In this document: piece after piece, positions 2,896 through 36,422 of the stretch
Position numbering within the stretch: position 1 is the first letter of the stretch
Layout of the letters: the number at the start of each line of letters is the position of its first letter
Source of the DNA: Guillardia theta CCMP2712
Taxonomy: Eukaryota > Protista > Cryptophyta
Direction of reading: 5' to 3'
DNA length: 41,044 nt
Assembly (NCBI RefSeq): GCF_000315625.1
Contig: NW_005434655.1
Location: 486,672 to 527,715, forward strand
Made by a program: the position numbers and the translations under genes
The notes under the pieces: model-generated
Told to the model about the DNA's origin: nothing
The model's database searches: none
The model's input: the letters and a program-made list of their open reading frames with translations, nothing else

Positions 2896-3229
2896 GGCCT
2901 TCAGGCAAGTTTGACGAGTTCGACAGGTGCACGAGACTGTCAAGTTCGATCATCAGGGCGGGTCGTCGACTATAGTAGAGGTCGAGAGCTTGGAGATCGA
3001 CCCGATGGCGGTGACTGGAACCTTTCGTGCTGCCTCTTGTAATGGAAACGCCAGGCTAAGATGGCGATGCTCCAGAACCTCCCTCCCCTGCCCAACTCAA
3101 GACACAAGTGACGAGACAGTCAACGAATTGACGCGTTCATTTGATGCCAGTGCAACAAAAATGCCTCACTGCAGCAGCACGAGCTCGTTGAGGGTGAAGA
3201 CGAAGACGGTCGCATCACACGCGCACGTC

Positions 3230-5027
3230 TCATGACTTGGAAGAACTCTTGGCTGCTGCCTTGCGAGCTTCCGCTTTTCGCTCCGCGGACTCGATGAGAG
3301 GACCAAGCTTCTGCTTCTCTGCAAGACCCTGCAAAGCAAGAGAGTGTCAACGTGCAAAGCATTTGCTAGACAAGCATTCGACAACAAACTGACCTGAAGC
3401 AAGTTCATGATAAAAGGAATGAAGTTATGTCGGCGACGAGCATTCTCTCTCGCGTATCGTTGAAATTTCTCATCCTCCATGTCCAGGAGCTGCAGCGTAA
3501 CCAAAAGTCAAGACAGAGAAACTTGAACTCGAGCTACCGACCTGACGCAGCTCTGACGCGCGATACTTGAAGCGGTTCAGCATGCTCTGCGCGCATCGGG
3601 AATCATGAGGAAAAGATTGTGAGGGGCGTGGGACGAACCTTCAGCTGCTCGACACTCTTGTCCGTCACGTCGACTGGCGCCTCCTTGCTATCATAGCCCT
3701 CCGTGTCGACGTCCTCCATCATGTCTTCCACCTCCTCTCCTGCAGTCAAAATGAGAACAATGCGGACGGGCGGCCAGTGGGCAACCGTGAGAGAGGAGCG
3801 CCGCACTGATGAGCTGAGAGTCCGTCTGCAGCTTGCATAGCTCTTGCATGTACATGTCCCTAGGAAGATTCAGTACGACCAAGAGGTACAAGGGATCCAG
3901 GACTTCTTGTTGGCGCAGACAGCCAAAAGATTAAAGCGGATCTCGTTGGAGGAATATTTCTCGATCCTATCCTGCAGGATGGGCCGCACCTGGCGTGCAA
4001 GGGTTGAATCAGAAGGAGCTTCTGTAATGACTCAGCAGACTTTCACCTGTTTCCACCACTGAGAAGTATCTGTGCAATCTCCCAACAAGATCGGTCCCTC
4101 TTGCAGACCATCCAGCTCCCAGAGTTTGCCACCGATGGGCATGTAAGCTGTGAAGTGATAGGCGTCTCCGTCTTTCCTTGACTTGTCCTCTTCCATTTCA
4201 AACGGTTCGGGTCTGAGCCACAGAAGTCAGCCACGAGCGACACAAGGGAGTCTGTAGAGACCTGGCGAAGCTGTTGTGGCAGCTTCTCATCATCTCACTG
4301 TTGCTCATCGCCTCGCCCTTGAGGTCAGGAGGGAAGTCAGCCGTGAAGGTCTTGAACTCCGTCAGCTCCTTGCCCAGGTTAATGCCCTCCGCGTTCATCA
4401 TGATGTTGAGCAGGGCTTGCGTGCCGCAGGCGTTGTGGATGACTTGCTTGGCGAAGTAGAGGTTGTGGTTTTGAACGCAAGTCGAGCTCGCACGATGCGT
4501 CGACGCCATGTCTTGCGTCCACTTGAACAAGAAGATCAAACCATAGATCGGAGCCAAGTTTGAAAACTCAGCATCTTCCATAGTCACAATCTCCTCCACC
4601 TGTGAGTCAAAGATGATATCATTTCGTCATGGCAAAATACCTTCACAGAGAATGTTGTCGACTACTTCTTAAATTAAATGGTTTGAGCTGTGCAAATCTC
4701 ATCCTACCTCCTGCATGCTCTTTTCCTTGTGCCTCATCACTTTGTACGAATACATTCCAACAACAACGTGCAGCAGTACATCTACCCTATACCACTGAGA
4801 CCGGAAGTGGGAAGCGATGATAGAGAGGAGGGACGTCGGAAATGGAAGAGGAAGCTATGAGTGATGAGGTGAGAGAAGATGGAGGTGGCAGGAGGGAGCA
4901 AGAGGCAGGGAGCTGAGAGGAGGAGGGAGAATGCGTCATCAACCTGGGTTCCTCGTATCCCGAAGTCTCTTGCAAGCGACGTGAACACCGCGGGGTCGCT
5001 CTCGATAGTCGACCATCCCTGCGTCAT
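3230..5027 (-). CDS. UCHL5: Ubiquitin C-terminal hydrolase, peptidase C12, UCH37/UCHL5 type
   Basis: Motifs seen: [41 protein letters not shown] (catalytic Cys), [19 protein letters not shown] (His/Asp), and the UCH37 tail [19 protein letters not shown]. Last exon [32 protein letters not shown] ends at TGA 3232-3230. Confidence 0.92.
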
Positions 5028-7129: not shown

Positions 7130-9262
7130 GCTCTGGGTTACAGAACTCAAGAACCGGAGAGCCCTCACAAATGCCTGCTTCAACTGGTCTGATGGCTCCT
7201 GACACCCCTTGACCCACACGAACTTGACATTCTGTTTCAAGAGATTCGTCAAAGGTATCGCCAATTCAGCGAATTTAGGAATGAAGCGTCGATAGTAGTT
7301 GCCTACTCCAAGCCAGGAATTGACTTCCTTCACGGTGATTAGTAGGAGGCCTCGCCATGATAGCATCCACTTTCGGCTTTTCACGGTGTGCGGATTCAAA
7401 ATTCTTCAATGCGGAATCCCAAGAACTGACATGTCGACTTCTTATCTGACGGTCGTGCTCCTCTGATATTGCCAACTGAAATGGATGCCACGTTGTCCAT
7501 TTAAGAAAAGTCGGGTGTGTCCTCCAGTCCCTGCAATGCAGACTCCAGAAAGCGCTGGAACTGTGAGGCCGAGTCGTCCAGCCCAAACAGTAGACGTGTG
7601 AATTGAAACTTGCCGAGCTTGCCGCACAAAGGCTGCCCCGGTGATAGGGCGAGAGCTCACCTGTAGCTCGACCTGCCAACATGAGCGTGAGAGGTCCATG
7701 CTAGATATGAAGACTCTGATTTGCTCCTCTGGAACGGATGAGACTTTGACCATATCTCTCTGAAGCATGTAGGATAAAGCCTGGGCCTGCAAATCCCCTT
7801 CAAGTGCGATTCAGTGGAATCGGGTAAGGCTTGCTCTGAACGGGTTGACCTCCTTCATGCAGTTCGATTTTAATTTTGAACTCCCGATTGAGTTTCGCTC
7901 CCACTTGGGGACCTCCACGGGGACCTCCACGGGGACCTCCACGGGGACCTCCACGGGGACCTCCACGGGGACTTCCACGGGGACCTCCACGGGGACCTCC
8001 ACGGGGACCTGCACCAGCCCTTTCAACCAGAACCTAGCATATACCTTCTAGTCTCCCATCCAGATCGTGACATCACTATCATGGAGCCACGAAGACGAAA
8101 TAATATCAGTATGTTGTAAGGATATGACATAAAACCTCGCCCTGCTTTGGAAACGCGGCCCTAGTGCGTCAATGTCACCACTCCCTTGGATATCTCCAGT
8201 CTCACGAACCCGATTAGCCATCTCCACTGCCACGATCTCGTCCGCAGTCCAAGTCTTGTGTGTTGATCGGCGACAAGACCCATCTGTCGAGCCACTCTCT
8301 CATCGATGAAGTTCTCGTCCGCCCCTGTGTCCAGCAACGCACGCAGCGCTGGTTGTTTAACGCCCTTCAGGTAGAGGCACAGGTGAGGAAGAGGGGGGGA
8401 GTAAAATGTCGTCGCCTGGGGTCCCCCCTTCGCTAGGCGACGGTTCTCATGGAAATGTACATTCTTCGACAACCTGGGACACTTGGATCGTACACGCCTC
8501 AGAAGTTCCCAAACGATTCCTTCCTACGATACCTTATCCGGGGAGCAGGCGACCATACGATACGTCACTGCTGAGTGTTATCTCTGGAACAAGTTGGCCA
8601 CCACCGACTCCTTGGTCCCTTGCTTCATGTCCCGAAGCAGGGTCATCAGCTTGATCGGAAAGTCCGGTGACATCCATGTTTTCTTATCCCCAAGAAGTAA
8701 TTCAATTCGTAACGTATTCACCCATGAGGCCTTTGGCGGAGTTGATCCACTGCTCCTTTGGGATAGACTGCGAACTCAATTGAAACTCAAGTGACGCCAG
8801 CCAGGTAACGACCGAGAATTCCACTTCCCTCTTGCCAATTCCACTTTCCTTGTTCCACTTCCCATTTGAAAGCTTCGTAACGATAGCGGAGGATAAGAAA
8901 CCGTATGATAAGAATCGAATTTGATAGGCATCGTTGTAACTTCCGGCGACGTGCATCACCCGACTCACTTCTACATCGCCACCATGATCGGATCGCAGTC
9001 CGTGTTGTCGTCTTGTGCATGGCATCAGTGACCTCCTCTTCACAAATGCCGGGCAGCCCCGCGGAGTCACCCGACAGGCAGGGGACGCGAGCGAGCTTGT
9101 CCCATCCGTATCTCTATCCTTCCGCGAGCTCCTGCCTCTCGCCCTGGGTGTCGCTCTCTCCCGGTCTTCTTCCGAGGCTTCATCCCCATCGGGTGATCGC
9201 CCTTCCCTGCCCATCGGCTCCTCTAGTAGCCTGGACCCCTGTCGGGTTCTCATACGCGGCAT
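7130..9262 (-). mobile_element. Degenerate Ty3/gypsy LTR retrotransposon internal region (gag, aspartic protease, RT, RT-RNaseH connection), truncated before RNase H/integrase
   Basis: Gag-like VVTWLASLEFQLSSQSIPKEQWINSAKGLMG. Protease LRALLDTGADENFIDERVARQMGL. RT FISSMDLSRSCWQVEL, LGKFQFTRLLFGLDDSASQFQRFLESALQGL, *MDNV (decayed YxDD) and EEHDRQIR. Connection VKEVNSWLGVGNYYRRFIPKFAELAIPLTNLLKQNVKFVW. Many stops and frameshifts. Confidence 0.88.
7907..8014. repeat. 12-bp minisatellite (GGGGACCTCCAC) x9, reading (PVEV)n between protease and RT
   Basis: Nine near-perfect tandem copies visible, two of them variants. Confidence 0.95.
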
Positions 9263-9537
9263 TTATTCATGTTGCGACCCACGGCAATACAAACTGCACA
9301 ACTGAGGTCCGACCTGTCCTCTACCATCCCATAGATCATCAACCCGCAGGGTTGCGATGCCATGCGGCTAAGATCGAAGACATGACGAAAAGAAGGCTGA
9401 GCATGACATTGAGTTTGAAGCTCCCCTTGGAGTCGAGCTCATCCCTCTGGCCGGCGGTGAGCTGCCTCGGACTGTGTCGGCCGCATCGGCTCGATGCTTG
9501 ATGGCCACGGCGTCACCTTTGAGCTAGTTGGTTTGCC

Positions 9538-11612
9538 TTAGTTCTTTGTCGCCTGGTTGTCTGGGTTGATGATGGCACTGTCTCCGGCTTCTCGTGCAGT
9601 ACGTGGAGCTTTTAGCTTTGCAGATGGAACGTAGCACAGGTACACAGGTATCTCTGCCGAGTCACAAACCATCAGGCCACAATCACGCGCATCAGTAAAG
9701 AACTGGGTCGCTACGCGACCAGCATCGTCAAACTGCTCTCGGGTGCCATTGAAGAGTATACCCATGGCTGCGAGCCTGGCATCCTTTCCTAGTATGTCAG
9801 CTTTGGCATTGAATGCTATGGACATATTGTAGATGACATGGAAGAGCTTCCTTGGGTCTTCGCAGAACTCAAAGTATATGTACTCTCCTCTCTGGATGTT
9901 GACGTCGGAGAAGGCTTGTTGGCATGTCCCAACCCGGTATATATCTCTCTCCGGGTCTTGAATGACATCCTTGAACAATGTCCCGAGACGCAGGTTATCC
10001 TCTTTGAAGGTAAGACACAATCCCAACCTCAGCACATCCCCGGCTTTGTATTGCCGCGCCTGCTCCGGTCCAAACAGTAGGTACTTTGTCACTTGTTGCT
10101 CTTTGTTGTACTCAGAGATCCTGGACAACTATGTATTAGCATTGGACTAGCAAGCGCCAGCACCAATAAGATGTTCGCAGACCTGGAGTTCGTGCCATGC
10201 TTATCGCTGCTTTCGGCTTGCTTGAGCTCGGCTATGGAAGGTTTGTGTTGTGTGCTTGCCTGGCTCATGATGATACTGTCTCCGGCCGTACGTGCAGTAC
10301 GTGGAGCTTTTAGCTTTGCAGATGGAACGTAGCACAGGTACACAGGTATCTCTGCCGAGTTATAAAACATCAGGCCACAATCACGCACATCAGTAAAGAA
10401 CTGGGTCGCTACGCGACCAGCATCGTCAAACTGCTCTCGGGTGCCATTGAAGAGTATACCCATGGCTGCGAGCCTGGCATCCTTTCCTAGTATGTCAGCT
10501 TTGGCATTGAATGCTATGGACATATTGTAGATGACATGGAAGAGCTTCCTTGGGTCTTCGCAGAACTCAAAGTATATGTACTCTCCTCTCTGGATGTTGA
10601 CGTCGGAGAAGGCTTGTTGGCATGTCCCAACCCGGTATATATCTCTCTCTGGGTCTTGAATGACATCCTTGAAGAATGTCCCGAGACGCAGGTTATCCTC
10701 TTTGAAGGTAAGACACATTCCCAACCTCAGCACATCCCCGGCTTTGTATTGCCGCGCCTGCTCCGGTCCAAACAGTAGGTACTTTGTCACTTGTTGCTCT
10801 TTGTTGTACTCAGAGATCCTGGACAACTATGTATTAGCATTGGACTAGCAAGCGCCAGCACCAATAAGATGTTCGCAGACCTGGAGTTCGTGCCATGCTT
10901 ATCGCTGCTTTCGGCTTGCTTGAGCTCGGCTATGGAAGGTTTGTGTTGTGTGCTTGCCTGGCTCATGATGATACTGTCTCCGGCCGTACGTGCAGTACGT
11001 GGAGCTTTTAGCTTTGCAGATGGAACGTAGCACAGGTACACAGGTATCTCTGCCGAGTTATAAAACATCAGGCCACAATCACGCACATCAGTAAAGTGCT
11101 TTGGCGCTACGCGACCAGCATCGTCAAACTGCTCTCGGGTGCCATTGAAGAGTATACCCATGGCTGCGAGCCTGGCATCCCTTGGTAATATCTCAGGATT
11201 GCAACTGAACACTGCGCACATATTGTAGATGACATGGAAGAGCTTCCTTGGGTCTTCGCAGAACTCAAAGTATATGTACTCTCCTCTCTGGATGTTGACG
11301 TCGGAGAAGGCTTGTTGGCATGTCCCAACCCGGTATATATCTCTCTCCGGGTCTTGAATGAGATCCTTGAACAATGTCCCGAGACGCAGGTTATCCTCTT
11401 TGAAGGTAAGACACAATCCCAACCTCAGCGAATCCCCGGCTTTGTACTGCCGCAACTCCGGTCCTCTCTTTTGGCACATTTTCATTGGTTGTTGATACGC
11501 CCTAGCACTAGCAAGCGCCAGCATCAATAAGTTGTTCGCGGACCAGGAGTTCCTGAGCGAAGGGGTCAGATCCTGTCGCGCCGCCCATCCCCTCGTACCT
11601 CTGCCATGCCAT
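9538..11612 (-). CDS. Unknown protein with three tandem copies of a ~140-aa core domain (left palindrome arm)
   Basis: ATG at 11612, then a 46-nt first intron. The 62-nt introns at 10819-10880 and 10121-10182 join the three overlapping ORFs in frame (NSR|ISEYNKEQQ). No stops or frameshifts within the units. Confidence 0.65.
10121..10818. repeat. Extra 698-bp tandem unit in the left arm (chimeric copy)
   Basis: ORF ends 10089/10787 and starts 10128/10826 are offset by exactly 698 bp, and the flanking sequence recurs at that period. Confidence 0.9.
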
Positions 11613-12207
11613 GTTTCTGCGGAACGGATCCTCGACCGGCTTGTACCAAAAGAGGAGAGGAGGGGCGAGGAAAAAAAGAAAGAAGCGCGGGAAACCTTGT
11701 TGCGATAAGCGTTGGTTTGCATTTACCCGCGTTGTTTGATTTAGAGACTGTAGGTGGGTAGGATTTCAAATATGAGGCGGAGGTTTGGCACATTTCGATT
11801 GGATTTCACGCTCGCCGCAACGTTCTTGCAGCTTTCAACTCGATATTGGCATGAGTGATCCCCACCCCACCCTACACCACCCCCTGCATCTTGCAGACAA
11901 ACCCACCCCTACTTACATCTCTTAAACCTGGGGTATCAACTGGAGCCTCGGCGAAACAGCAGTTGCTTTAAACTGGCTGCCAAAACGTTCCATACCAGCA
12001 GGCGGCGAGCGTGAAATCCAATCGAGATGTGCCAAACCCTCCCCTCATTTTTCAAATCCTACCCACCTACAGTCTCTAAATCAAACCGCGCGGGTAAATG
12101 CAAACCAACGCTTATCCCAACAAGGTTTCCCGCGCTTCTTTCTTTTTTTCCTCGCCCCTCCTCTCCTCTTTTGGTACAAGCCGGTCGAGGATCCGTTCCG
12201 CAGAAAC

Positions 12208-13584
12208 ATGGCATGGCAGAGGTACGAGGGGATGGGCGGCGCGACAGGATCTGACCCCTTCGCTCAGGAACTCCTGGTCCGCGAACAACTTATTGATGCT
12301 GGCGCTTGCTAGTGCTAGGGCGTATCAACAACCAATGAAAATGTGCCAAAAGAGAGGACCGGAGTTGCGGCAGTACAAAGCCGGGGATTCGCTGAGGTTG
12401 GGATTGTGTCTTACCTTCAAAGAGGATAACCTGCGTCTCGGGACATTGTTCAAGGATCTCATTCGAGACCCAGAGAGAGATATATACCGGGTTGGGACAT
12501 GCCAACAAGCCTTCTCCGACGTCAACATCCAGAGAGGAGAGTACATATACTTTGAGTTCTGCGAAGACCCAAGGAAGCTCTTCCATGTCATCTACAATAT
12601 GTGCGCAGTGTTCAGTTGCAATCCTGAGATATTACCAAGGGATGCCAGGCTCGCAGCCATGGGTATACTCTTCAATGGCACCCGAGAGCAGTTTGACGAT
12701 GCTGGTCGCGTAGCGCCAAAGCACTTTCTTGATGTGCGTGATTGTGGCCTGATGTTTTATAACTCGGCAGAGATACCTGTGTACCTGTGCTACGTTCCAT
12801 CTGCAAAGCTAAAAGCTCCACGTACTGCACGTACGGCCGGAGACAGTATCATCATGAGCCAGGCAAGCACACAACACAAACCTTCCATAGCCGAGCTCAA
12901 GCAAGCCGAAAGCAGCGATAAGCATGGCACGAACTCCAGGTCTGCGAACATCTTATTGGTGCTGGCGCTTGCTAGTCCAATGCTAATACATATTTGTCCA
13001 GGATCTCTGAGTACAACAAAGAGCAACAAGTGACAAAGTACCTACTGTTTGGACCGGAGCAGGCGCGGCAATACAAAGCCGGGGATGTGCTGAGGTTGGG
13101 ATTGTGTCTTACCTTCAAAGAGGATAACCTGCGTCTCGGGACATTCTTCAAGGATCTCATTCAAGACCCAGAGAGAGATATATACCGGGTTGGGACATGC
13201 CAACAAGCCTTCTCCGACGTCAACATCCAGAGAGGAGAGTACATATACTTTGAGTTCTGCGAAGACCCAAGGAAGCTCTTCCATGTCATCTACAATATGT
13301 CCATAGCATTCAATGCCAAAGCTGACATACTAGGAAAGGATGCCAGGCTCGCAGCCATGGGTATACTCTTCAATGGCACCCGAGAGCAGTTTGACGATGC
13401 TGGTCGCGTAGCGACCCAGTTCTTTACTGATGCGCGTGATTGTGGCCTGATGGTTTGTGACTCGGCAGAGATACCTGTGTACCTGTGCTACGTTCCATAT
13501 GTAGAGCCAAAAGCTCCACGTACTGCACGTACGGCCGAAGACAGTGCCATCATCAACCCAGACAACCAGGCGACAAAGAACTAA
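12208..13584 (+). CDS. Unknown protein with two tandem copies of the same domain (right palindrome arm)
   Basis: ATG at 12208, intron 12222-12267 (GTACGA...CTGAC...CAG), and intron 12940-13001 (GTCTGC...GCTAAT...CCAG) fusing unit 1 to unit 2 in frame. TAA ends at 13584. Confidence 0.65.
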
Positions 13585-14169
13585 GGCAAACCAACTAGCT
13601 CAAAGGTGACGCCGTGGCCATCAAGCATCGAGCCGATGCGGCCGACACAGTCCGAGGCAGCTCACCGCCGGCCAGAGGGATGAGCTCGACTCCAAGGGGA
13701 GCTTCAAACTCAATGTCATGCTCAGCCTTCTTTTCGTCATGTCTTCGATCTTAGCCGCATGGCATCGCAACCCTGCGGGTTGATGATCTATGGGATGGTA
13801 GAGGACAGGTCGGACCTCAGTTGTGCAGTTTGTATTGCCGTGGGTCGCAACATGAATAAATGCCGCGTATGAGAACCCGACAGGGGTCCAGGCTACTAGA
13901 GGAGCCGATGGGCAGGGAAGGGCGATCACCCGATGGGGAGAGAGAGCGACACCCAGGGCGAGAGGCAGGAGCTCGCGGAAGGATAGAGATACGGATGGGA
14001 CAAGCTCGCTCGCGTCCCCTGCCTGTCGGGTGACTCCGCGGGGCTGCCCGGCATTTGTGAAGAGGAGGTCACTGATGCCATGCACAAGACGACAACACGG
14101 GCTGCGATCCGATCATGGTGGCGATGTAGAAGTGAGCCGGGTGATGTCAGTCGGACGACCCTTGTCATG

Positions 14170-15600
14170 TCAAGTTTTGTTCTTGTCTTGTTTACTTTCT
14201 ATCGTGCCTTCGACACCGCTACGTGCAAGGTCTGCATATTGCAGAGCAAAGGCCTGGAGCTGGTCAGGTCTGACAGATCTTTGTTTTTCACCAAGCAATG
14301 CTGTCGCTTCGTTCAATGATAGCGGGGGGGGTCTGCTTGAAGAACTCGGTTTCATGATCGCCTCCGGCCCTGGTGTCGCTGTCGGCATCCGGCACGGAGT
14401 CCTGCTCCTTGCTGACTTGCCGTGGTCCCTCCTTGTTTTCATGGCAGTCTGACAAACTCTGCTCTGTCATCCGTCTAGCAGGAGCCTCGTCCAGCCATCC
14501 TTGCTGTCCTGAGGCAGAGATATCAAGCTCCGAGGGAGTGGGAGGTGTCGCTTGAAAGAGTAAGTCGTGTCAGTGTCATCGAGATGCCGCGATGTCTGAA
14601 TGAAATCCTGGTAGACTTCTTCTTTGGTCCGCCTCCTCGCTTCCTGACCCTCGATCCATCGACCCCCTCCTTCATCCAGCCCTGCATGCATATTCCTGTC
14701 TCCGGGTCCTTTGGCATCGTCTGCCGACAGGCTTGCTGTAGCAGTTGCCTCACAGCTCAACGAGTTGCCCTCCCACGGAACGCGAGGATGGCATGTCTTT
14801 GCCTCGCTCAGATCTTGGTGCTCATCACCAGACATACGATGCTCTGCCAGATTGAGCGTCGTCGGGTCATCTGTTCCGCCGCGCTCGCACAAGTCCTGAG
14901 AAACTGATTTTTCGGGCTCAGGACAGCATGGTTGCATTTGACGGCGGGGTCGAGTGTGGTCAGGTGTACCATGTCACCTTTCTCATCAACCTTGCTCTCG
15001 TGGTTGTCTTTCCTGCCATTCTGCACAGAAAAGTGCACTCCCGATCCTCATCCCCGAGCTCCTCCTCCATTCCAAGTCCTCTTCATCTCCTGCTGCATCT
15101 TATGCTGCAGGTTGCGGAAGGCGAAAGGGCTCCCAGAATTCCAGCACCGCACGCGGATAAAATCGAATCAACTCGTCCAAGAAGGGGCCAGCGCCTTTCA
15201 CTCGAAGTTTGTGCGTGTTGATAGCTTCGGAATCGTAACTGATCTCAGGGTATAGCGAATCCATCTTGATGGAGTGGTAGATGTCGACGTGGGTGGTGTG
15301 ACTCGCGCTCAGCAAGTGTTGTGACCTTCTGCCTTCTCTCCTCCTCCAGTAGCTTCTCAGCTTGCTCCTTGAGGATTGCAAGGTTCGGAGCCAATGCCCA
15401 TAGCGCTGCACGAGCAGCTCGTTCAATTCCCACGAATTGTTCCCAAACTTATCCTGACGACATTAAGCATGGCGTCGCACGATGCTCGTGCAAGTCAGGC
15501 GATATCACCACAAGTCTCTCTACATTCTTGAGGTTCGATGGGTTGTAGATGGCTGGAAGATGATCTGCAAGCTTGACTTCAAGTCCGTCCCCTCCCTGAC
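14170..15600 (-). pseudogene. Truncated or decayed hypothetical gene fragment
   Basis: Spliced segment LEVKLADHLPAIYNPSNLKNVERLV|DKFGNNSWELNELLVQRYG resembles a small helical motif seen in protist proteins (Y.PEKL..V..L..KY...L..KY, from memory). Broken ORFs follow and there is no clear start. Confidence 0.35.
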
Positions 15601-18632: not shown

Positions 18633-21498
18633 TCACCTTTTCCTCCTTTTAGAGTTCATGATGACCTGAATCTTCTTGGTGTAATCCTTACATCTGGCCA
18701 CCGCGTTACACTCGAAGTTGTCGACATTGTCAAAGAGCTTCTTGTAGTAATCCCTTCGCTTTTCGCTCTCACTCTTCTCAATAACCCTATCGTCAGTCTC
18801 AATCGAGTCCTCCTCCTCTGCTCGCCCACGGGACCCTGGCATGCAGCACGTACAACACTTGATCGTCTTGTGCAACCATTTTTGCAACCAGTTTTCACTC
18901 TTGATCTTCTTGCGCGAAGAGTTTTCCCTCTTGATCTTCTTGCGCAACCAGTTTTCCTTTAACATCGACTCATATCGCAGGACCTCACATGCAAAAGGGA
19001 AAATCCACAGGGTGGAAGCGATCTTCATGCACTTTTCGATCTCGTCGGAGATAATGGCGATGATGACGTTCATGTAGAGGAGGTTCAGGAGAATCACCCA
19101 CACGACCTGCAGTATCAGCGTAAACTGCCAGACGCTGGAGCTGATGAGGAAGGTGTCGAACGAAACTTGCCCCAGCATGATGAACACAAGCTCGAGCATG
19201 ACTTGGAACACGTCTCCCTCATAGTTGAAGTCCTCTGCTTCACCTTCAGCGGGATGCCGAATTGTTACCCATATTGAGAAACCGAAAGACATGAGCAGAG
19301 GAACAAACAGAAGCGTAAGGAAGAAGACGTGCTTGATAAGCACGATGTAGAGCACCAGCAGGTTGGTGCCGATCCTCTCGATTGGCAGGAGGGCATGAAG
19401 GAGGGTGCACACAACGAAGATCCAGCCGAGGGCAAGAGCAGTCAACTCCCCTCGGATGTCATCCCTGTAGAAGCAGATGAGCGAAGCGTGGACGGTGACG
19501 TTGATGCAGACATAGAGGATGAGCGCAAGGTTCTTGAACACCCCTGAGGAGATCTTGTCGTACAACTTCACCGGCCTCCCGTCCTCGTTAGGATGGAAGT
19601 CTCGGTGGGTCAGCCTGCGGCGTTTCCATCCTGGATACAGCAGCCACCAGGTCGCAGCCATCTTCGTCCAAATCGGAACTTCTGTCTTCCAGCTTGCTGG
19701 TGTGACACTTCCATCCTCTCTGAAGTCGAGCAGCCGTAGGATGGAGCAAACAGAGAATACGACGAGGTAGGCAATATAGGGGATGAGCGTTTTCCCGATG
19801 TAAACGTAAATCCCAGACTTCCACCACTTGCTCTGGATGATCTCCTTGAAAGTTTCCTCTTCTGCAAACTCAGCAATCTCATGATATGCGATGATTTCGA
19901 CCCCACAGAGAGTTCTGAGTTTCTCTGCCGATCCGCCGTTAGTGTCCATCTGAAGTTTTTTCAGAAGATGCCCGTAGGGAGGCGCTCTTCTTTCAGCCGA
20001 TCTGAGAATATAGTCGTACATGTCTCTGTATCCCAGTCGTATCGCGAGGAGAAAGGGAGTGAGGCCATCCAGGTTCATGATTTCAAGAGAGGAAGTGTAA
20101 GAGAGATTTTCGATGCATTGGTTACAACCTTTGCACGCTGCTCCCTTGCAGAAATTTTCTGGGTAGCGTTCATCATGCAATTGATCTCCCTGCGGCTTAG
20201 CAACTCCCTCCATTCTGCCTCCATTTTGGTCGTGCCCCTTCACTTGACTTGCAGGCCTTCCTTTCCCCTCCCTTTCCTTGGCATGCCTTCTCTTGAGTTT
20301 CAACAACTTGAGCTTTGACATGATCGTGTATTCCAGATCCAACAAGCAGTCGACGACTTCCTTCTGTTGGTGCATCACAGCAAAGTGAAGAGCCGTGTTG
20401 CCATGGAAGTCCTGCAGCCACAGTATCTTGAGACTGTTCGTGTAGTTCGTGAAATGATGCTCCTCACTCTTCTCAGGGTCGCCAAGGACCAAGAGTTTGC
20501 AGATCTCCTTCTCGCCTATGCTTGAGGCAAGAGAGAGGGGCAGTCCTCCCAGATAGACCATCGGGGATGCTGCGTCCATATGCGAGCTGTCGGGGTTTTG
20601 AGTGAACTTGAAGCGGTGGACCTTGTTGATATTGTATCCTCGCAGCCACTTGATCAGCCTCTTGCGAGAACTCAGCAGATTGTTCGGTTTCTGCATGCGG
20701 ATCACGGATGGCTTGAAAAATGCTCCTTGAATCTCTTTGTCTACCATGGCCCCTTTCGTCAGCAGGAACCTAACCAGTTTCTTCCTCTTGCCAACGATCG
20801 CCATGTGCAAGGCGGTTTCTCCTGTGTAAAGACCAGCATCGTAGGGCAGGATCTTTCGCCGGAGAAGTTCAGGATGGTTTAAATCAGATTTGTACTCTTC
20901 GTTTACAACCCCTTTCCAATTTCCAACAAACACATGTGCCATGTCCCAGAAGACGTCGGAAATCTTTCCCGACGCCTCCCCCACATTCCTCAGCGCGAAC
21001 AAACAGATGAGATGCAAAGGATGTTCTCCTACAGGCCCGTGGGAACACATCTCAACTCCATGCACTTCCAGAAGGAGGTCGATGACGCTTTTGATCAGGC
21101 TAGTGTATCTGTTGCCGTGGGCACACTCCAAACCTTGGTCCTTTGCTTTGATGATTTCCGAGCACATGGTAGATAAATCCATGTCTGACTGTTCGCCTTG
21201 GCTGCAATCCTCTCTTACAGTGTCAGAGTTCTGATAATTCTTTTTAAGGTGATCTTGAACCTCTTGCAGCTGTTTCCAGATCTGCAGGTGGATTGTTCAG
21301 AGGAAGAAGTTGTTACCTTACACTTGTTACCTTAGTGCCGAACTGCTTCTGAGTGAAGTGCATCCGTATCGCTGTGTTGGTCTGCCTTTCATAGTCTTGA
21401 AACAGCCAACCAAAACTTTCCTTAGCATGGTAATCATTCTCAATCTTTGTCAACAACTTGGTGTCGGGGTGAACTCTTGATGATTGTGACATCTTCAT
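18633..21498 (-). CDS. TRPV-like ankyrin-repeat cation channel
   Basis: Ankyrin motifs YTGETALHMAIV, YLGGLPLSLASSIG, QDFHGNTALHFAV and NLDGLTPFLLAIRLG. About six hydrophobic helices; S6-like LLNLLYMNVIIAIISDEIEK; TRP-helix-like LWIFPFACEVLRYE. The upstream exon joins via a short GTAACA...CTGCAG intron (~21283-21331). Confidence 0.85.
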
Positions 21499-22195: not shown

Positions 22196-23794
22196 TCAGG
22201 CAAGCAATGATGAAGCAGGATTCACTGCCTGTGAGATTGATGAACGTCGAATGATGGCCCTAGCAGTATGTTGTTGATGTTTCCGTTGCAATTTCAAGCC
22301 ATACATGGCCGCCTCGCTCTGAAGCTCCTTCAGCTGCTTCATCTTCTCTTCGGTCTTGACACGATTGGGAGCACGGTTCTCAATCGGGTTGCTCGATGAC
22401 TTGCCTTTTGCTGAACTGATCAGGTGGAGGAGAGGAGATAGATTATGGGTCAACGCTCGATTCTGCAGCAAACACAAAGATTGGGATGGGTTAGGGTATT
22501 GAGATGCACAGAAAGGAAACATCTCACTTGAGGAGTGGGCCACGCGAGTCCGGTGGGTTTGACAGCGGCTTGCTGAACAGATCCGAGTTGTCAGCGTATC
22601 GAAGAAGCACAAGCATAACATACATCAGAATGACGTACACGACGCGTCGGCCTCGTGCTCAGTCTTGATCTCAGCGTACTCTTAGGCTGAGCCCCAACCG
22701 GTTCTGGGAACCAAGTCAAAAAGTCAGCAAGAGAATAGCAATAGAGGAAGCTTACTCGCAGCAGAATAGATCGATCTTGATCTCTTTGCCACATAGTCAT
22801 GGAAAAGCTCCTTCACTTGCTCGAGATGGAAACCTCGAAGCAGACTGTCCTTATCTAGCGTGTCTGGCCCCTGGTACGTCAAGATCATGGTCGTAGGCTT
22901 GTCAGTCTGATAGAACTCCAACTTGATATCATGATATCCGGAATCAAGGAATATCCCTGCGTTCTCTTCATGTATGCCAGAGAACCCCGTGTTGTTGATG
23001 AGAGAGACGCCGTCGATGGAGAAAGTCGAGAAATTAGAGGACATAACAGTGAATTGGTAGTCTCCAGAAACATAGATTCTGATGGATCCCACCCATACGG
23101 CAGCGATTCGCTTGTCTTTGTACTCGTTGTGTCCATCCAAAAAGTCATCAAGAGTCAGGAAATCGATGGTGTTCTCTACGTTGGAGAAGTCAGGATCGAG
23201 TTCTGACAGTGATACGTTGCTCATATCCACTGAGGGGTCGAAGAAGTAGTAATCGCCCCAAAAGCCGTTGATGTACTCATGCCGAACCGGGTTGTTGCAT
23301 CCGAATCGTGCCATCACATCAGCAACCGAGGAGTTCTGAGTCCCATTGCTGCTGCTGTTGCTTATCGCAAGCAGAGTTTGCCAGGCTGCCTCTCTCGAGT
23401 CATCATCAAGGGTGCGCAGACGCTCCATCTGCTGCTCAGAGTCTACTTCAGACAGCATATCATTCACGTCTAGGAGGAAGCTACACAGCGATGACTCCTG
23501 CTGGGTTGTCTCATTGTTCACGGCAGCCAGGAATTCTTGCACGAGCGGGTTTGAGCTCTTGGAGAAGGTCTGGAAGGCTTGTCGCACCATCCACTCGTTC
23601 TCGTCAGCATATCCAGCTGAGGAGCTGAAGCCACTAGCTGTAAGAATACCATTCCGAGGAGAGGAGGAGACACAGAGGCACAGGAGGCACAGAACAAGAC
23701 CCGAGACGAAGAGCAACGCGCCTCGGGGTATTGAGCATTCTGGTTCTGCTCTGTGGGATGGCAACGAGCGACAAGAGGAAACAATATGATCCAT
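22196..23794 (-). CDS. PA14-domain protein with an N-terminal transmembrane/signal-anchor segment
   Basis: Hydrophobic LLFVSGLVLCLLCLCVSS. PA14-like IAAVWVGSIRIYVSGDYQFTVMSSNFSTFSIDGVSLINNTG...GIFLDSGYHDIKLEFYQ...MILTYQGPDT. Further 3' exons follow a GTAAGC donor near 22755; 3' end approximate. Confidence 0.78.
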
Positions 23795-31143: not shown

Positions 31144-34100
31144 ATGAGGAGGCTCGTACAGCTGAAGGCTGCCAGTGACCGAAATCGTAGCTCCGCGGGA
31201 TTCTCGGAGTACCTGGAGGTGTGCGGGCAGTGAGAGGTGGGGAGGAAGGTGACTGAATGATGTGCTGCTCCAGCGCCATAAGGTCTTCAACCTCATCTCC
31301 GACCTCATCTCCGAAGTCCTCCTAGTCCAACCTGACGACCCCCTTCGGTAGTTTGCAGTCTCCTGTGCGCATCTCTGACTGGGCAAGCCCTCCTGCAGGT
31401 TTGTCCATGATGCGACAGCCAGACTGCTCGACGTAGACAAGTTCAGTCCAGAAGAGGTTCAAGACGACCATGAGGAAGAGGAGACGATGCAAGAAGCAGA
31501 CAACGAACGACTCGCCCTGAGGATGCGAATAGAGTGTGTGGGCAGTAGCGGGAAAGTGGAAAGGTCCTACTTTGTCAGGAAATGTCCATCATCTGGGACA
31601 AGCGAGCTTCGCATCCAATCTTGGAAGGAGGTTTGCGTCGTTCTCCTGCTTCTCGTGTCACTCAATCTCATCAGGAGGCGATGGATGAGTTGTGTAGGGT
31701 TGTTGAGAAAGCTTTCAAGTACCCTTCTCATCCGAACCTCGCTGATGGTGTAGGAGTTGAGGTAACTCTGTTCTTGTACATGCTACGATGGTCCTATGTG
31801 ACGATTCCGTGCTCAGGTGGGCTCTGGTAGAGAAGAAAGCTCAGGGTCGTGGGTGCTGGACGATCAGTTCAGAACGAGGCTGAAGGATTTGCACGACAGG
31901 ATGAAGGGGGGGAGGAGCAGGAGTGAGATCAAGTCAATGATCTTCGAACTCTCCATGCAGACGGGGTTGAGCTCCGAGGTGTTGAGCGGGCTTTACGACC
32001 TTGACTTCGGCCGGTACGAAGAATCCGTCCAGAGGGAGCGGGAGATTCTAAGGAAAGAGTGGAGTCTAGTCCACGAGACCAACGTCGTCCGGGTTCTTGC
32101 TCGAAGCCTTCCTGGCGGGTCCCCCGACTCTCCTCTCTCCTTCCTCGATCGAGCCACACCAGCCGAGCTGAAGAGTGTCTGGAGCAAGCTGACGTCGCTG
32201 CTCGCCGGCCCTGATGTTGAGCGGAACCAGTCCAAGTCACAGCTGGCAGTCAGCCGGAGGGGGGCCTCCGGGAACTCCAAGTTTGAGATCTTCACCAACG
32301 GCAAGGATGCGCGAGTGGCGACATTCGGGAGGCTGGGGGAGTTCTACAAGGGGCTGATCGACAAGATCGGGCTGCCGTCTCCGCAGCTGATGCGCGCGAT
32401 GGAGAGCGAGCACTGCATGCGGGGGGACTCTCAGGATGAGTTCGAGCCCGGCAACTACGACACTCGCACAACTCCGTGCAAGGAGTGGCAAGCGCTGACT
32501 GATGAAGCGACTCGTAGACGGCTGTCCGTTCCTCCGAGGAGGATCAGGTCGATGGAGGACCTCATGAAGGAGCATGTGGTACAGAGTGCCAACTTGCTGC
32601 CTGAAGAGGTCCTCGCGTTGCAGCTTTATTCTGGTGAGACTTCCTTTACAGCATGTTCTTACGTTTGATCGCCCCGCTCATCTCCTCGTGGGTTCCTCTT
32701 GCAGCATCACTATTCTCTCCTCCTCCTCCTCCTCCCCCCCCCCCCCCGCCCTTGAACCTTGACTTGGAACTCCAGGCCCGATGTTCCGCAAGTACAACAC
32801 CGTCCTGCGAAAGTTCCCAGAGACGGAGGTGAAGGCGCTGAAGAGCAACAACTACGTCACGACCATCTTCTGCGTAGTGAGCGGCATCATCAAACTGTCG
32901 CGGGTCAGCGAGCTGTCGGAGAGCCGGCTGGTCTTCCGCGGCCTCAAAGATCTCTCGCTCCCTCAGGAGTTCTTCACAGAGGACGAGTACGGTGTGAGGG
33001 GAGGCATCGAGTTCGCCATGATGAGCACCACAAGAGACAAGTCAGTGGCGCTGCAGTACGTCGGGACAGGCACAGCAACTGTCTTCGAGATCGTCTACGG
33101 GGCTGTTGACCGCGGAGCCTCGATCGGCTTCTTGTCTCAGTACCCGGATGAAGATGAGATTCTGTTCCCTCCTCTCTCGTTTCTTGAGGTCGTGGGTCAG
33201 CCGCGGGTTGAGGGCGGGCCGGCCAGCGTTCCCATCCGCATCATTCCTCTGAAGATCAATGCCAACGTCACTTGCTCGACCATCGAGGAGATCGTTGAGA
33301 AACGGAAGCAGCTGCACATGGCACTTCTGACTAACACCATGAACGAGGCGATAGGAGAGCTCAACAGCATCTTTGCGAGCGAGAGGGTCGAAGCTCGGCT
33401 CACGCATGCCCCATACGATCGCATGCAAGATGGTCATCACAAGATCAAGGCCTCCATCCTTACGGAATGTCAAGAGCTCATGGACTTCTATGCCAAGAGC
33501 CCTCCCTCTTGGTTCAACGACGACGAGAACTATGCCAAGGCCATGCTGCAGGCTTCCAAGCTCAAGCAGATGGCGCTGGGCAAGTTTGTCTTCTGGCTGG
33601 ACCACAACTCGGGGGATGGGATGGCGGGAACGATAACCAAGGAGTCGATCTTCTACCTCCATCGGCTCATGGAGTCCAACCTCCTCCGACGATTTCGCGA
33701 CAAGGATGAGGAAGAGGATCGCGAGGCTCTCGCGCTGCAGATCTGCAAGCACAAGGGGCTGATCTTCAAGGACCTCGCTGAGCTCAACGACTTGGGCGAA
33801 CCTCCTCTCTTCGCCGTCGTCGCGAATGGCGATGAGGAAGGCGTCGAGCTGCTGCTGACGGCCGGGTGTGAGATCGACTCCAGAGATCGCGACAAGTCGA
33901 GCGTCCTGCATGTCGCAGCCTTCATGGGACACACCGAGATGATCGATCTCCTCATCCAAAGACAAGCAGATCTCTACGCCGTCAACTCCACTGGTCACAC
34001 GTGCCTGCACACGGCCTGCCGCAACGGACATGTCGACGTCGTTCGCAGGCTGATCGCCCTAGGAGGTGAGAGGCTGGTCCTGATGCAGACCAACACGGGG

Positions 34101-36422
34101 TGGTTGTGTACTCACAGTGCAGCACAAAACGGTCACTTCAAAGTGTTGGAGGTTCTTCTGCAAGTCGCATGTGAACAGCAGCTGAGCACTCAAACCAACA
34201 CGGGCTGGTATTGTGTTCATACCGCAGCGCAGAACGGACATGTGCGTGCGATAAGATTAATCTTGCAGACTGGAGGGAACCAGCAGCTGCTGAACAAGAC
34301 GAATGACCTTCGGACGGTGGCGTACATTGCCTCTCAATACGGGCATATGAACGTGCTCAAGCTGATAGAGGAAGCCGGTATGAACGAAAGCTTCAACATG
34401 CTAACAGATGACGACAAGTCTTGTGCGTACATGGCCGCCAGGTTTGGGTTTATCGAGGTTCTTCGATACCTCATCGCGCATTGCGACAAATCTTTGTTTG
34501 CTGTCAGGACTTTGAAAGATCAGCACTCTTGCGTAACAGCTGCTTGCTCGAGCGGAAGTGTCGAGGCCCTGAGGCTCGTCCATGAGGTCGTGGGGTCGAA
34601 GGTGGTACAGGAGCAGGCGAGGGACGGAAAGACCTGCTTCCACATGGCTGCGATCTTCGGGCATGTTGAGATCATGAGAGAGTTGATCGCCATGGGACAC
34701 GCCAGCCTCATGTCCAAGGTGTCTCGCGACGCCTCCACCTGCGCCTTCACCGCCTGTACCCACGGACATGCCGCGATCTTGCAGCTCATAGCAGAGACCG
34801 TCGGAACTGACTTGCTGTTCAAACCATCCCGACAGAAGCGATCCTGTGCCTTCATCGCCTGTCAGAACGGGCACATGGACTGCCTGAGGCTGTTGTTGCA
34901 TACAGCAGGAAGAGAACTCTTCGACCAGCTCACAGACGACGGAACGACCTGCGCTCACATTGCAGCTTTTCATGGACATCTGAATGTTCTGCAGTTCCTG
35001 GTAGAGAACATTGGGGAGAACGTGATCTTTAGCAGCAACACCGCAGGGAAGAGCGTGGCCATGTTTGCTGCAGAGAATGGCAAGATCGGGGCGATCAAGT
35101 TTCTTTTGCAGCATGGAGGAAGAGAGACCATCTTGCGGCCAACGAGCATGGGCAAGACTTGCGCTCATGTCGCTTGTGCCAAGGGCGATCTCGAGATGCT
35201 GCAGCTCATCCTTGACATCGACGCAGCTGAGCTCCTGTCGATGCTGACCAAGAGAGGAGAGAGCTGCGTCCACTTCTGCGCCAAGAGAGGCCGCGAAGAC
35301 GTCATGCAGCTCGTTATGCAGCTGGTCCCGCACGAGTTCCTGACCCTGAGGACCGAGGAGGGGATCATTCCCTTGCACCTCGCGTCTCAGTACGGTAACT
35401 TACAAGTGTTCGAGCTGCTCGTGGAGAAAGCCGGCAAGGAGCAGGTGGCCTCCTGCACGGCAGCAGGTGACTCTTGCCTGCTCCTCGCAGCGGCCAATGG
35501 CCACGTGAACGTTGTGGGGAGGCTGTTGGAAGAGATGCCGAGCCTGGTGGAGGTTGCCAACGACAAGGGGGAGAGCTGTGTCTACGCCGCTGCATCCAAC
35601 GGTCACGTCCCAGTGTTGAGGGACCTGCTGCGGTCAGCGAGCAGGGAGAGCTTGTTGCGAGGCATCAAGGATGGAGGGTTCACCAGCGCGCACATGGCCG
35701 CCGTCAGTGGGCAGCGAGAAATCCTGAAGATGCTGCACGAAGCTGCTGGAGACGAACTTCTCTTCCTCCTCGATCATAACGGGAGGTCCTGCGCGTACCT
35801 GGCAGTGCAGAACGGGAGGCTCGACGTACTCGAGTACCTGGTGTCCGTGGGAGGCAGGCAAGCTCTCAGTGCGAGGACTGTCGATGGCAAGAGCTGTTTG
35901 CACGCCGCATCACAAGGTGGGAGGGTGGAAGAGATGAAGGTGATGATGTCGGTGCTGGACTTTGACGATCTTCTCTTGACGGACAATCATGGCAAGTCCT
36001 GCCTCCACGTTGCGGTACAGCAGGGACATGCTGGCATAGTCGAGGTCCTGCTGGGTTACACCAGAGCAAGGGAGTTGGTGGGACTGGAAAGTGATCAAGG
36101 GAGGTCAAGCGCGTACGTGGCCTCTCAGGAGGGCCACTCCCTCCTCTTACAGCGTCTGCTTGAGGTTGGGGGGGCTGAGCTTCTCAACAGACGCGCCAAG
36201 GATGGGAGGACTTGCGCGCATGTTGCCGCTCAGAACGGGCACCTCGAAGTCCTGCAAGTCATCGCAGAGACTGGCGGGCCGGCGCTCTTCGCCGTCAAGA
36301 CGCCGGACGGCCAGACGTGCAGGAGTCTCGCAGAAGACAAAAAGCGAGAGAAAGTCCTGCTGCTCATGGACAGCCTGGAGGAGGCGGGTGCTGGGGCCTC
36401 AGCAGCGAGCGAGCCGGAGTGA
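31144..36422 (+). CDS. Dpy-30/RIIa-like docking motif + mono-ADP-ribosyltransferase (R-S-E) domain + ~24 ankyrin repeats
   Basis: Spliced N-terminus FSEYLE|RHKVFNLISDLISEVLLVQPDDPLR|FVHDATARLL. ART motifs LALQLYSG|PMFRKYNTVLR, VFRG, MMSTTRDKSVALQY and SQYPDEDEILFPPLS. Then ~24 repeats of ~35 aa with consensus GxTCAHxAAxxGHxxxLxxL. The start codon could lie further upstream. Confidence 0.85.

What the first reader, a model, noticed from the sequence alone, without database searches (positions are those of the whole stretch)
8954..14146. 5.2-kb palindrome carrying head-to-head, intact, copy-number-variable genes of an unknown domain family in a transposon graveyard
Seen: two inverted arms (~2.9 kb and ~2.1 kb) around a ~180-bp spacer, each with a gene transcribed outward. 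Their ATGs (11612 and 12208) share a ~600-bp bidirectional upstream region. All five domain copies are free of stops and frameshifts, while the neighbouring transposase and gypsy sequences are full of them. The arms differ by scattered substitutions, a ~20-bp deletion and one whole 698-bp unit. Inference: the locus is real, recent and/or kept similar by arm-to-arm conversion, and possibly under selection. Palindromic, accordion-like arrays of this sort are typical of fast-evolving conflict or effector genes. This is the best candidate for an undescribed system in the window.
Basis: partly seen in the sequence, partly recalled or inferred. Interest (0 to 1): 0.88.

Follow-up and report, generated by a model that had tools for sequence, protein, structure and literature searches.

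The report
Young gene-bearing palindrome in Guillardia theta
A real 5.2-kb mirror-image duplication in the alga Guillardia theta carries two head-to-head copies of a repeated gene piece, but the copies show no sign of selection or expression and look like recent, drifting offshoots of a large alga-specific gene family.

Summary
Arms 8947-11818 and 12002-14153 are 98.6% identical in inverted orientation around a 183-nt spacer. They carry three and two tandem 698-bp units, each with an open ~190-aa domain ORF. Contigs from two separate DNA runs cover the centre and both outer junctions.

The window is Guillardia theta CCMP2712 nuclear DNA. The two genes are already public hypothetical-protein models, GUITHDRAFT_105176 and 105177. 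In those models the units are joined by predicted, unverified 62-nt introns.

The domain is not an orphan. It is a divergent, truncated offshoot of an undescribed G. theta family. That family gives 75 matches in the genome, many in tandem or inverted arrays. Its core looks weakly like a restriction endonuclease (Z about 5).

The palindrome copies lack the family's N-terminal region and coiled-coil tail. They also lack four of its best-conserved polar residues. dN/dS is about 1 in every comparison. An RNA-seq sample of about 20 million reads placed three reads on 5.7 kb. Stop-free ORFs are expected by chance at this age.

The most likely reading is a young inverted plus tandem duplication of unconstrained gene copies, not a conflict system. 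A fast-evolving functional gene pair is not excluded. A nearly invariant 3' block with a tail-anchor-like reading frame remains unexplained.

The parts
8947..11818 (-). Left arm of the palindrome (2872 nt, three 698-bp units)
   Evidence: Inverted repeats I1, I2 and I5. The arm alignment gives 98.6% identity. The outer junction is seen in contigs of runs X1 and X2.
11819..12001 (.). Spacer between the arms. The unique core is 11833-11975, and the arms extend 14 nt further with a 12-nt indel.
   Evidence: An X2 contig covers 11764-12056 and an X1 contig covers 11400-11904.
12002..14153 (+). Right arm of the palindrome (2152 nt, two 698-bp units). It carries derived 698-bp and 22-bp deletions.
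   Evidence: The C228 paralogue and the left arm both keep the 22 nt.
9538..11612 (-). Public gene model GUITHDRAFT_105176 (P0026, 634 aa, three domains). Exons: 11612-11599, 11552-10881, 10818-10183, 10120-9538.
   Evidence: The cluster look-up names it. The exon coordinates reproduce the protein exactly. Splicing is not verified.
12208..13584 (+). Public gene model GUITHDRAFT_105177 (P0002, 422 aa, two domains). Exons: 12208-12221, 12268-12939, 13002-13584.
   Evidence: Splicing is not verified.
9538..10128 (-). Domain ORF, left unit 3 (196 aa)
10236..10826 (-). Domain ORF, left unit 2 (within ORF 10089-10826)
10934..11500 (-). Domain, left unit 1 (within ORF 10787-11722)
12320..12886 (+). 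Domain, right unit 1 (within ORF 12098-13033)
12994..13584 (+). Domain ORF, right unit 2 (196 aa). It is a mosaic of left units 2 and 3.
12940..13001 (+). Predicted 62-nt GT..AG intron joining the units (698 = 636 + 62). Mirror copies lie at 10819-10880 and 10121-10182 on the minus strand.
   Evidence: Its size is close to the species' modal intron size of 47 nt (PMC6260743). No read shows the joint.
13651..13765 (+). Nearly invariant 3' block with a tail-anchor-like reading frame that is out of frame with the domain ORF. An exact mirror lies at 9357-9471 on the minus strand.
   Evidence: Unexplained.
8161..8472 (-). Context: a weak retroviral-type aspartyl protease relic in the left flank
   Evidence: Pfam PF13650, E = 1e-4, just under the curated cutoff. 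The flank has old dispersed copies.

Best explanation
This is a young palindromic segmental duplication in the nuclear genome of the cryptophyte alga Guillardia theta.

Inferred order of events:
1. A ~1.3-kb segment carrying one copy of a ~190-aa domain existed as a single unit. One such single-unit copy survives on another scaffold (C228).
2. A 698-bp unit was amplified in tandem, most likely by unequal crossing-over.
3. The whole block was then duplicated in inverted orientation around a short spacer, as in fold-back or template-switch inverted duplications.
4. The right arm later lost one unit and 22 bp. Patches were exchanged between units and arms.

Shown: the domain is a divergent, truncated offshoot of a large G. 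theta-restricted gene family. The core of that family resembles the restriction-endonuclease (PD-(D/E)xK) fold.

Inferred: the palindrome copies have lost the family's flanking regions and most of its conserved polar residues. They evolve without detectable constraint and are not detectably transcribed. They are therefore most likely drifting duplicates (pseudogenes in the making, or at best new-born genes) rather than a working system.
For: Structure:
- define the arms, units, spacer and mosaic.
- Contigs of two DNA runs cover the centre and both outer junctions.
- The one 'loose end' in run X2 at 11998 matches the sequence just upstream of the C228 paralogue. It is therefore not an alternative arrangement of this locus.

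Identity:
- P0002 and P0026 are GUITHDRAFT_105177 and 105176 of G. theta CCMP2712.
- The genome has 87,145,349 bases in 669 pieces, matching the published 87.1 Mb and 669 scaffolds (PMC6260743).

Paralogue: the unit, the 5' region and the tail occur at only one other place in the genome, once each (C228).

Family:
- An exhaustive HMMER search gave 25 cluster representatives. The distant ones (E 1e-19 to 3e-4) are G. theta hypothetical proteins or unnamed metagenome proteins.
- A profile search of the genome gave 75 matches, mostly intact ORFs of 325-611 aa, many in arrays.

Losses:
- The palindrome copies have no N-terminal region and no coiled coil.
- D36, K98, Q101 and R104, conserved in 76-97% of canonical members, are G, V, N and I here.

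Neutrality:
- dN/dS is 0.8-3.1, never significantly different from 1.
- As a control, distant canonical pairs give 0.56-0.62 (p about 0.001-0.003). C228 against its metagenome orthologue gives 0.29 (p = 0.05).
- Simulated neutral substitutions leave the ORF open in 42% of runs (25 substitutions) and 18% (50 substitutions).

Expression:
- 3 of about 19.8 million sampled RNA-seq records fell on 8700-14400, with no joints.
- The 90% cluster of P0002 holds only the two genome-annotation proteins. The canonical member P0007 has an MMETSP transcript.
Against: - No indel falls inside the ~535-nt domain between the window units and C228. The linker and tail have seven gap events in about 460 nt. This suggests frame-preserving constraint for at least part of the history.
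- The domain is more diverged from C228 (9.4%) than the 5' region (5.0%) and the tail (5.3%), p = 0.01-0.03.
- Unit 1 against units 2 and 3 gives dN/dS of 1.6-3.1 (p = 0.05-0.27). Both of these results would also fit diversifying selection.
- The RNA test is one run, about 6% sampled, with no expressed neighbouring gene laid as a positive control.
- The predicted introns are of typical size for this species.
- The model's N-terminus has a hydrophobic stretch ending in Ala-Ser-Ala that could be a signal peptide. This was read from the sequence and not tested with a predictor.
Confidence: 0.58

Rival explanations
1. The two head-to-head genes are functional, fast-evolving genes, possibly secreted multi-domain proteins. 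They would be kept alike by arm-to-arm gene conversion, vary in copy number, and be under diversifying selection.
For: - All five domain ORFs are open and free of indels, while the linker and tail collect indels.
- The domain has diverged faster than its flanks.
- dN/dS is 1.6-3.1 between unit 1 and units 2 and 3, with a borderline p of 0.05 at best.
- The predicted 46- and 62-nt introns fit the species' modal intron size of 47 nt.
- The model's N-terminus has a hydrophobic, signal-peptide-like stretch (sequence reading only).
- Other family loci also sit in tandem and inverted arrays.
Against: - No dN/dS value differs significantly from 1.
- There is essentially no RNA-seq coverage and no splice joint.
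- Four of the family's best-conserved polar residues, its N-terminal region and its coiled coil are lost.
- Open ORFs are expected by chance at this divergence.
- Relative to the continuous ORF of the C228 paralogue, the unit junction carries a 1-nt frame change that the gene model has to splice around.
Confidence: 0.24
2. The palindrome is an assembly artefact: a fold-back chimera or a collapsed or mis-joined repeat in the 2012 Sanger/454 assembly.
For: - No read or contig spans a whole arm.
- Arms of 98.6% identity and tandem units are hard for assemblers.
- Another family locus on C29 shows 100%-identical inverted arms, which could also be artefactual.
Against: - A 293-nt contig of an independent 2021 run (X2) crosses the entire spacer into both arms (11764-12056). 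Contigs of X1 and X2 cross both outer junctions.
- The arms differ by 30 substitutions and by 12-, 22- and 698-bp indels. They are therefore two distinct sequences, not one read twice.
Confidence: 0.05
3. The ~1.3-kb segment (5' region, unit and tail) is a low-copy mobile or captured cassette. The palindrome would then be two insertions, or a fold-back-type element.
For: - The segment has sharp, shared homology ends in three different contexts: the window, C228 and a metagenome contig (L004 position 1054/1055 in all comparisons).
- The inner edge of the arms coincides with the start of the C228 homology.
- Retroelement debris lies beside it.
- The 3' tail block is conserved.
Against: - There are only two loci in 87 Mb.
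- There is no transposase, reverse transcriptase or integrase domain in the arms.
- The arms extend about 140 nt beyond the C228 homology.
- I did not identify target-site duplications or terminal repeats.
Confidence: 0.08

Closest known systems
Palindromic segmental duplications with gene pairs and arm-to-arm gene conversion, such as the mammalian sex-chromosome ampliconic palindromes (my own knowledge), and inverted duplications formed by fold-back priming (PMC3907307 and PMC10622511, abstracts seen)
   Same: Two inverted arms of over 98% identity around a short unique spacer, a gene in each arm, copy-number differences between the arms, and mosaic sharing of variants.
   Different: This one is a hundred to a hundred thousand times smaller. 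There is no evidence of expression or selection. The formation mechanism is inferred, and no diagnostic short inverted repeat was found at the spacer.
The unnamed Guillardia theta family of hypothetical proteins: GUITHDRAFT_109687-109709 (seven listed models in that range), 117846, 99739, 122192, 121946, 118166, 151982
   Same: Significant profile homology over the ~140-aa core (E down to 1e-19). The structural core residues are shared (L48, F52, F86, E87, A121, G123, G128, F133, P161). Both occur in tandem and inverted arrays.
   Different: Canonical members are single-domain proteins of 300-540 aa with an N-terminal region and a C-terminal coiled coil, often ending in a hydrophobic stretch. 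The palindrome copies are bare cores repeated two or three times. They have lost D36, K98, Q101 and R104.
PD-(D/E)xK (restriction-endonuclease-like) nuclease fold
   Same: The predicted strand and helix order fits. About 20 of the 50 best structural neighbours are nucleases of this fold: BglII, Can2, PaqCI, McrC, Cfr10I, FokI, NucS, HamA and XPF/ERCC4-like domains. The canonical family conserves an Asp before a strand, a Glu on the next strand, and Lys and Gln on the following helix.
   Different: All matches are weak (Z 5.2 or less, Foldseek E 0.04 or more). There is no sequence-level match to any nuclease family. The window copies lack the Lys.

Membership tests
DNA palindrome / inverted segmental duplication | Two long arms in inverted orientation, far more alike than chance allows | tested here: met
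   2122 of 2152 aligned bases are identical.
DNA palindrome / inverted segmental duplication | Centre and outer junctions present in independent sequence data | tested here: met
   An X2 contig covers 11764-12056. X1 and X2 contigs cover 8700-8993 and 14107-14400. No read spans a whole arm.
G. theta GUITHDRAFT_109707/117846-like family (unnamed) | Significant profile homology over the conserved core | tested here: met
   E 1e-19 to 3e-4 to canonical members. The window units score E about 1e-62 to 1e-67 against the family profile, which includes them.
G. theta GUITHDRAFT_109707/117846-like family (unnamed) | N-terminal ~100-aa region and C-terminal coiled coil | tested here: not met
   Both are absent from the window units and from the C228 copy in the family alignment. 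The coiled-coil hits occur only in canonical members.
G. theta GUITHDRAFT_109707/117846-like family (unnamed) | Conserved polar residues D36, D62, E87, K98, Q101, R104 | tested here: not met
   D62 and E87 are kept. D36, K98, Q101 and R104 are replaced by G, V, N and I.
PD-(D/E)xK nuclease superfamily | Restriction-endonuclease-like alpha/beta core | tested here: inconclusive
   The model's core has pLDDT about 90. The best Z values are 5.0-5.2 and many nuclease folds appear among the neighbours, but none stands out.
PD-(D/E)xK nuclease superfamily | Catalytic Asp, then Asp/Glu-x-Lys | tested here: not met
   The window copies have E87-F-C with no Lys, and the helix Lys98 of the canonical family is Val.
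Transposable element | Many dispersed copies and a transposition enzyme | tested here: not met
   Two loci only. No enzyme domain was found.
Selected, expressed conflict or effector gene array | Transcription of the genes | tested here: not met
   3 reads from about 19.8 million sampled records, with no joints. This is one run with no positive control.
Selected, expressed conflict or effector gene array | dN/dS significantly different from 1 | tested here: not met
   All pairs have p of 0.05 or more. Power is low.

The most novel reading that the evidence does not exclude
Two linked claims.

First, the G. theta family is an undescribed cryptophyte-specific family with a nuclease-like core, a coiled coil and a tail anchor, and it repeatedly amplifies in tandem and inverted arrays.

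Second, the palindrome genes are a living, secreted, catalytically dead derivative of it under diversifying selection. In them, the duplicated leader-coding segment of each internal unit has been turned into a 62-nt intron.
Probability: 0.12. Interest if true: 0.55.

Novelty: new member of a known kind. Interest (0 to 1): 0.27.

Why it matters
As it stands, this is a small, clean example of how a lineage-specific gene family throws off tandem and inverted duplicates. It shows that open reading frames in young duplicates say little about function.

The wider family is the more useful lead. It has many loci in one alga, no named domain, a possible nuclease-like core, and several inverted arrays. 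Nobody appears to have described it.

If the palindrome genes proved to be expressed and spliced, they would show a duplicated coding segment becoming an intron.

Tried and rejected
- **Sequence libraries.** Pfam, PHROGs, PDB-sequence and ESM-Atlas feature searches of the domain and of canonical members gave nothing beyond coiled-coil noise.
- **First structure prediction.** With only close copies in the alignment it was useless (pLDDT 43).
- **Viral fold library.** No match.
- **Polinton-like virus origin.** A paper on cryptophyte polinton-like viruses offered nothing that links them to this locus.
- **High-copy transposon.** Rejected, because only two loci exist.
- **Antisense ORFs in the tails (8905-9501 plus strand, 13621-14085 minus strand).** Not conserved in frame in C228.
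- **Joining the conserved 3' block to the domain ORF.** Stops in all three frames intervene. The only GT..AG candidate (45 nt) does not change frame, and its counterparts in C228 and the metagenome copy are 18-30 nt.
- **Repeat-induced-mutation bias.** The substitutions are a mix of types.
- **Literature.** No paper mentions the locus tags or palindromes in G. theta.
- **Handling of spliced models.** I sent no joined spliced model of my own to any search. Searches used single exons by reference or database proteins returned by the tools. only checked, inside a script, that the exon coordinates reproduce the public proteins.
Full report
**1. The observation.**
A repeat scan of 8000-15500 finds inverted arms that join into 8947-11818 and 12002-14153, with 183 nt between them. 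It also finds a 698-bp direct period, three copies on the left and two on the right.

A gapped alignment of the arms gives 2122 identical of 2152 aligned bases (98.6%). The arms differ by 30 substitutions, one 698-bp gap and one 22-bp gap.

The arms in fact run 14 nt further inward, with a 12-nt indel. The truly unique centre is therefore 11833-11975.

Every unit carries an open ORF across a ~190-aa domain.

**2. Is the locus real?**
I laid four public runs on 8700-14400.
- A 293-nt contig of a 2021 DNA run (X2) covers 11764-12056. It crosses the whole spacer into both arms.
- A 505-nt contig of a 2011 run (X1) covers 11400-11904.
- Contigs of both runs cross the outer junctions (8700-8993 and 14107-14400).
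- The one loose end, in X2 at 11998, matches the sequence upstream of the paralogue on scaffold C228. It does not indicate a second arrangement.
- No record spans a whole arm, so unit counts rest on the assembly.

The arms also differ at 30 sites and by several indels, so they cannot be one sequence read twice.

**3. Organism and annotation.**
The exhaustive protein search returned a 422-aa protein with two copies of the domain (P0002). The cluster look-up names it GUITHDRAFT_105177 of Guillardia theta CCMP2712. Its 634-aa cluster mate (P0026) is GUITHDRAFT_105176.

The genome handle has 87,145,349 bases in 669 pieces. This matches the published 87.1 Mb, 669 scaffolds and 52.9% GC (PMC6260743).

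The exon sets reproduce the two proteins exactly:
- Right gene: 12208-12221, 12268-12939, 13002-13584.
- Left gene: 11612-11599, 11552-10881, 10818-10183, 10120-9538.

So both genes are already public hypothetical-protein models. Each unit is one 636-nt exon plus a 62-nt GT..AG intron. This is as another first-stage note (s1-445676) proposed.

The intron sizes (46 and 62 nt) are near the species' modal intron size of 47 nt. No read shows the joints.

In the C228 paralogue the same stretch is read through as one continuous ORF, and the window units differ from it there by a 1-nt indel. The intron may therefore be a device of the gene predictor.

**4. What the domain is.**
Pfam finds nothing. 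The exhaustive HMMER search found 25 cluster representatives. Beyond the locus's own proteins and two metagenome fragments, the rest are distant (E 1e-19 to 3e-4). Where named, they are G. theta hypothetical proteins.

A family profile finds 75 matches in this genome. Most are intact single ORFs of 325-611 aa. Many lie in arrays, on C41, C4, C3, C29, C71 and C265.

Canonical members have an N-terminal region, the ~140-aa core and a C-terminal coiled coil, often with a hydrophobic end. One has an MMETSP transcript (P0007).

No Pfam, PHROG, PDB-sequence or literature match exists.

With a 42-sequence alignment, AlphaFold gives a confident core (residues 30-170, pLDDT about 90) with strands and helices alternating. 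Fold searches give only weak matches (Foldseek E 0.04 or more, Z 5.2 or less). About 20 of the top 50 are restriction-endonuclease-fold nucleases: BglII, Can2, PaqCI, McrC, Cfr10I, FokI, NucS, HamA and XPF-like domains. The Atlas neighbours include YhcG, NucS and DUF4143 clusters.

The canonical family conserves D36, D62, E87, K98, Q101 and R104, a pattern that would suit such an active site. A restriction-endonuclease-like fold is therefore a reasonable but unproven reading.

**5. How the palindrome copies differ from the family.**
They are bare cores. The N-terminal region and the coiled coil are missing. D36, K98, Q101 and R104 are G, V, N and I, as in the C228 copy. D62, E87 and the hydrophobic core are kept.

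**6. History of the locus.**
The unit, the 5' region and the tail each occur only here and once on C228.

C228 (L004 1055-2329) is a single-unit version of one arm, 86-94% identical. Its homology starts at the inner edge of the right arm and ends about 140 nt short of the outer edge. A metagenome contig (L007) carries an orthologue of the C228 copy in different flanks.

Relationships among the units:
- L1 and R1 are 99.3% identical over the 698-nt unit.
- L3 and R2 are 98.3% identical.
- At the sites where L2 and L3 differ, R2 alternates between the two.
- The 22 nt and the 12 nt that differ between the arms are present in C228 on the side of the left and right arm respectively.

The simplest order of events is:
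1. a single unit;
2. tandem amplification to three units;
3. inverted duplication;
4. loss of a unit and small deletions, with patchy exchange between copies.

The fold-back mechanism is an inference from how such duplications are known to arise (abstracts of PMC3907307 and PMC10622511).

Other family loci are also inverted. C2 has 544-nt arms at 98%, and C29 has a nest of 97-100% arms. C228 is not inverted.

**7. Selection and expression.**
- Nei-Gojobori dN/dS among the five units and against C228 is 0.7-1.3 over the whole ORFs and 0.8-3.1 over the 152-codon core. It is never significantly different from 1.
- The same script detects constraint elsewhere. Distant canonical pairs give 0.56-0.62 (p 0.001-0.003). 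C228 against its metagenome orthologue gives 0.29 (p = 0.05).
- Random substitutions leave the 196-codon ORF open in 42% of trials (25 substitutions) and 18% (50 substitutions). Five open copies that are recent copies of each other therefore carry little weight.
- An RNA-seq run of the species (about 6% sampled, 19.8 million records) placed three reads on 5.7 kb and showed no joints.
Both hold, but weakly: there was one RNA run without a positive control, and the dN/dS tests have low power.

**8. What argues the other way.**
- No indel falls in the ~535-nt domain between the window and C228. The linker and tail have seven gap events in about 460 nt.
- The domain is more diverged (9.4%) than the 5' region (5.0%) and the tail (5.3%), p = 0.01-0.03.
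- Unit 1 differs from units 2 and 3 mostly by amino-acid changes.
- The model's N-terminus has a signal-peptide-like hydrophobic stretch. This is my reading of the sequence and was not tested.

These points keep a functional, fast-evolving reading alive at about one in four.

**9. Unexplained.**
A ~115-nt block of the tail is nearly invariant in the window arms, C228 and the metagenome copy. It lies at 13651-13765, with an exact mirror at 9357-9471.

In one frame it reads as a short, hydrophobic, tail-anchor-like C-terminus. Its six variable sites are four synonymous changes and two conservative ones (binomial p about 0.04).

It is separated from the domain ORF by stops in all frames, and I found no convincing intron. 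It may be a C-terminal exon joined by splicing I cannot see, or a conserved non-coding element.

**10. Verdict.**
The structure is real and neatly resolved. The 'undescribed conflict system' reading is not supported.

The most likely reading is a young inverted and tandem duplication of unconstrained offshoots of a large, undescribed alga-specific family.

Noticed in passing
G000:C41:36900-41513 and 73894-86601; C4:205852-216148; C3:512394-519682; C29:522344-539127; C71; C265: An undescribed G. theta gene family gives 75 profile matches, mostly intact ORFs of 325-611 aa. It sits in tandem arrays with a period of about 1.95 kb on C41. Members have a conserved ~140-aa core, a C-terminal coiled coil and often a hydrophobic end or a signal-like start. 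No Pfam, PDB or PHROG match exists.
   Followed up: partly
L028 (G000:C29:521000-530999) and L029 (G000:C2:1284500-1293000): Other loci of the same family also lie in inverted repeats. C29 has a nest of 150-654-nt arms at 92-100% (most at 97-100%). C2 has a 544-nt pair at 98% with 4 kb between the arms. Either the family is prone to inverted duplication or the genome has many such duplications.
   Followed up: partly
window 13651-13765 (+) and 9357-9471 (-); L004 about 1310-1435; L007 about 1040-1140: A nearly invariant 3' block, more conserved than the coding domain, has a tail-anchor-like frame that is out of frame with the domain ORF.
   Followed up: partly
window 31817-36422 (+): A long ORF (32781-36422) has an NAD:arginine ADP-ribosyltransferase domain at its N-terminus, followed by many ankyrin repeats (Pfam). 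Another first-stage finding (s1-445677) covers it.
   Followed up: no
window 22724-23794 (-) and 18633-21182 (-): A 356-aa ORF with a PA14 domain and an 849-aa ORF with ankyrin repeats.
   Followed up: no
window 3166-5027 (-): Exons of a ubiquitin C-terminal hydrolase (Peptidase_C12 plus UCH_C). An ordinary host gene therefore lies about 4 kb from the palindrome.
   Followed up: no
window 8000-8946: The left flank has 69-88% identical fragments on six other scaffolds and a sub-threshold retroviral aspartyl protease match at 8161-8472. It is an old retroelement relic.
   Followed up: partly
runs X6, X7, X9-X16: Freshwater and lake metagenomes hold 5-35% of the locus's 31-mers, although G. theta is, to my knowledge, a marine culture strain. 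X6 contigs match at over 95% with a few differences. These may come from a close relative, or from contamination.
   Followed up: no
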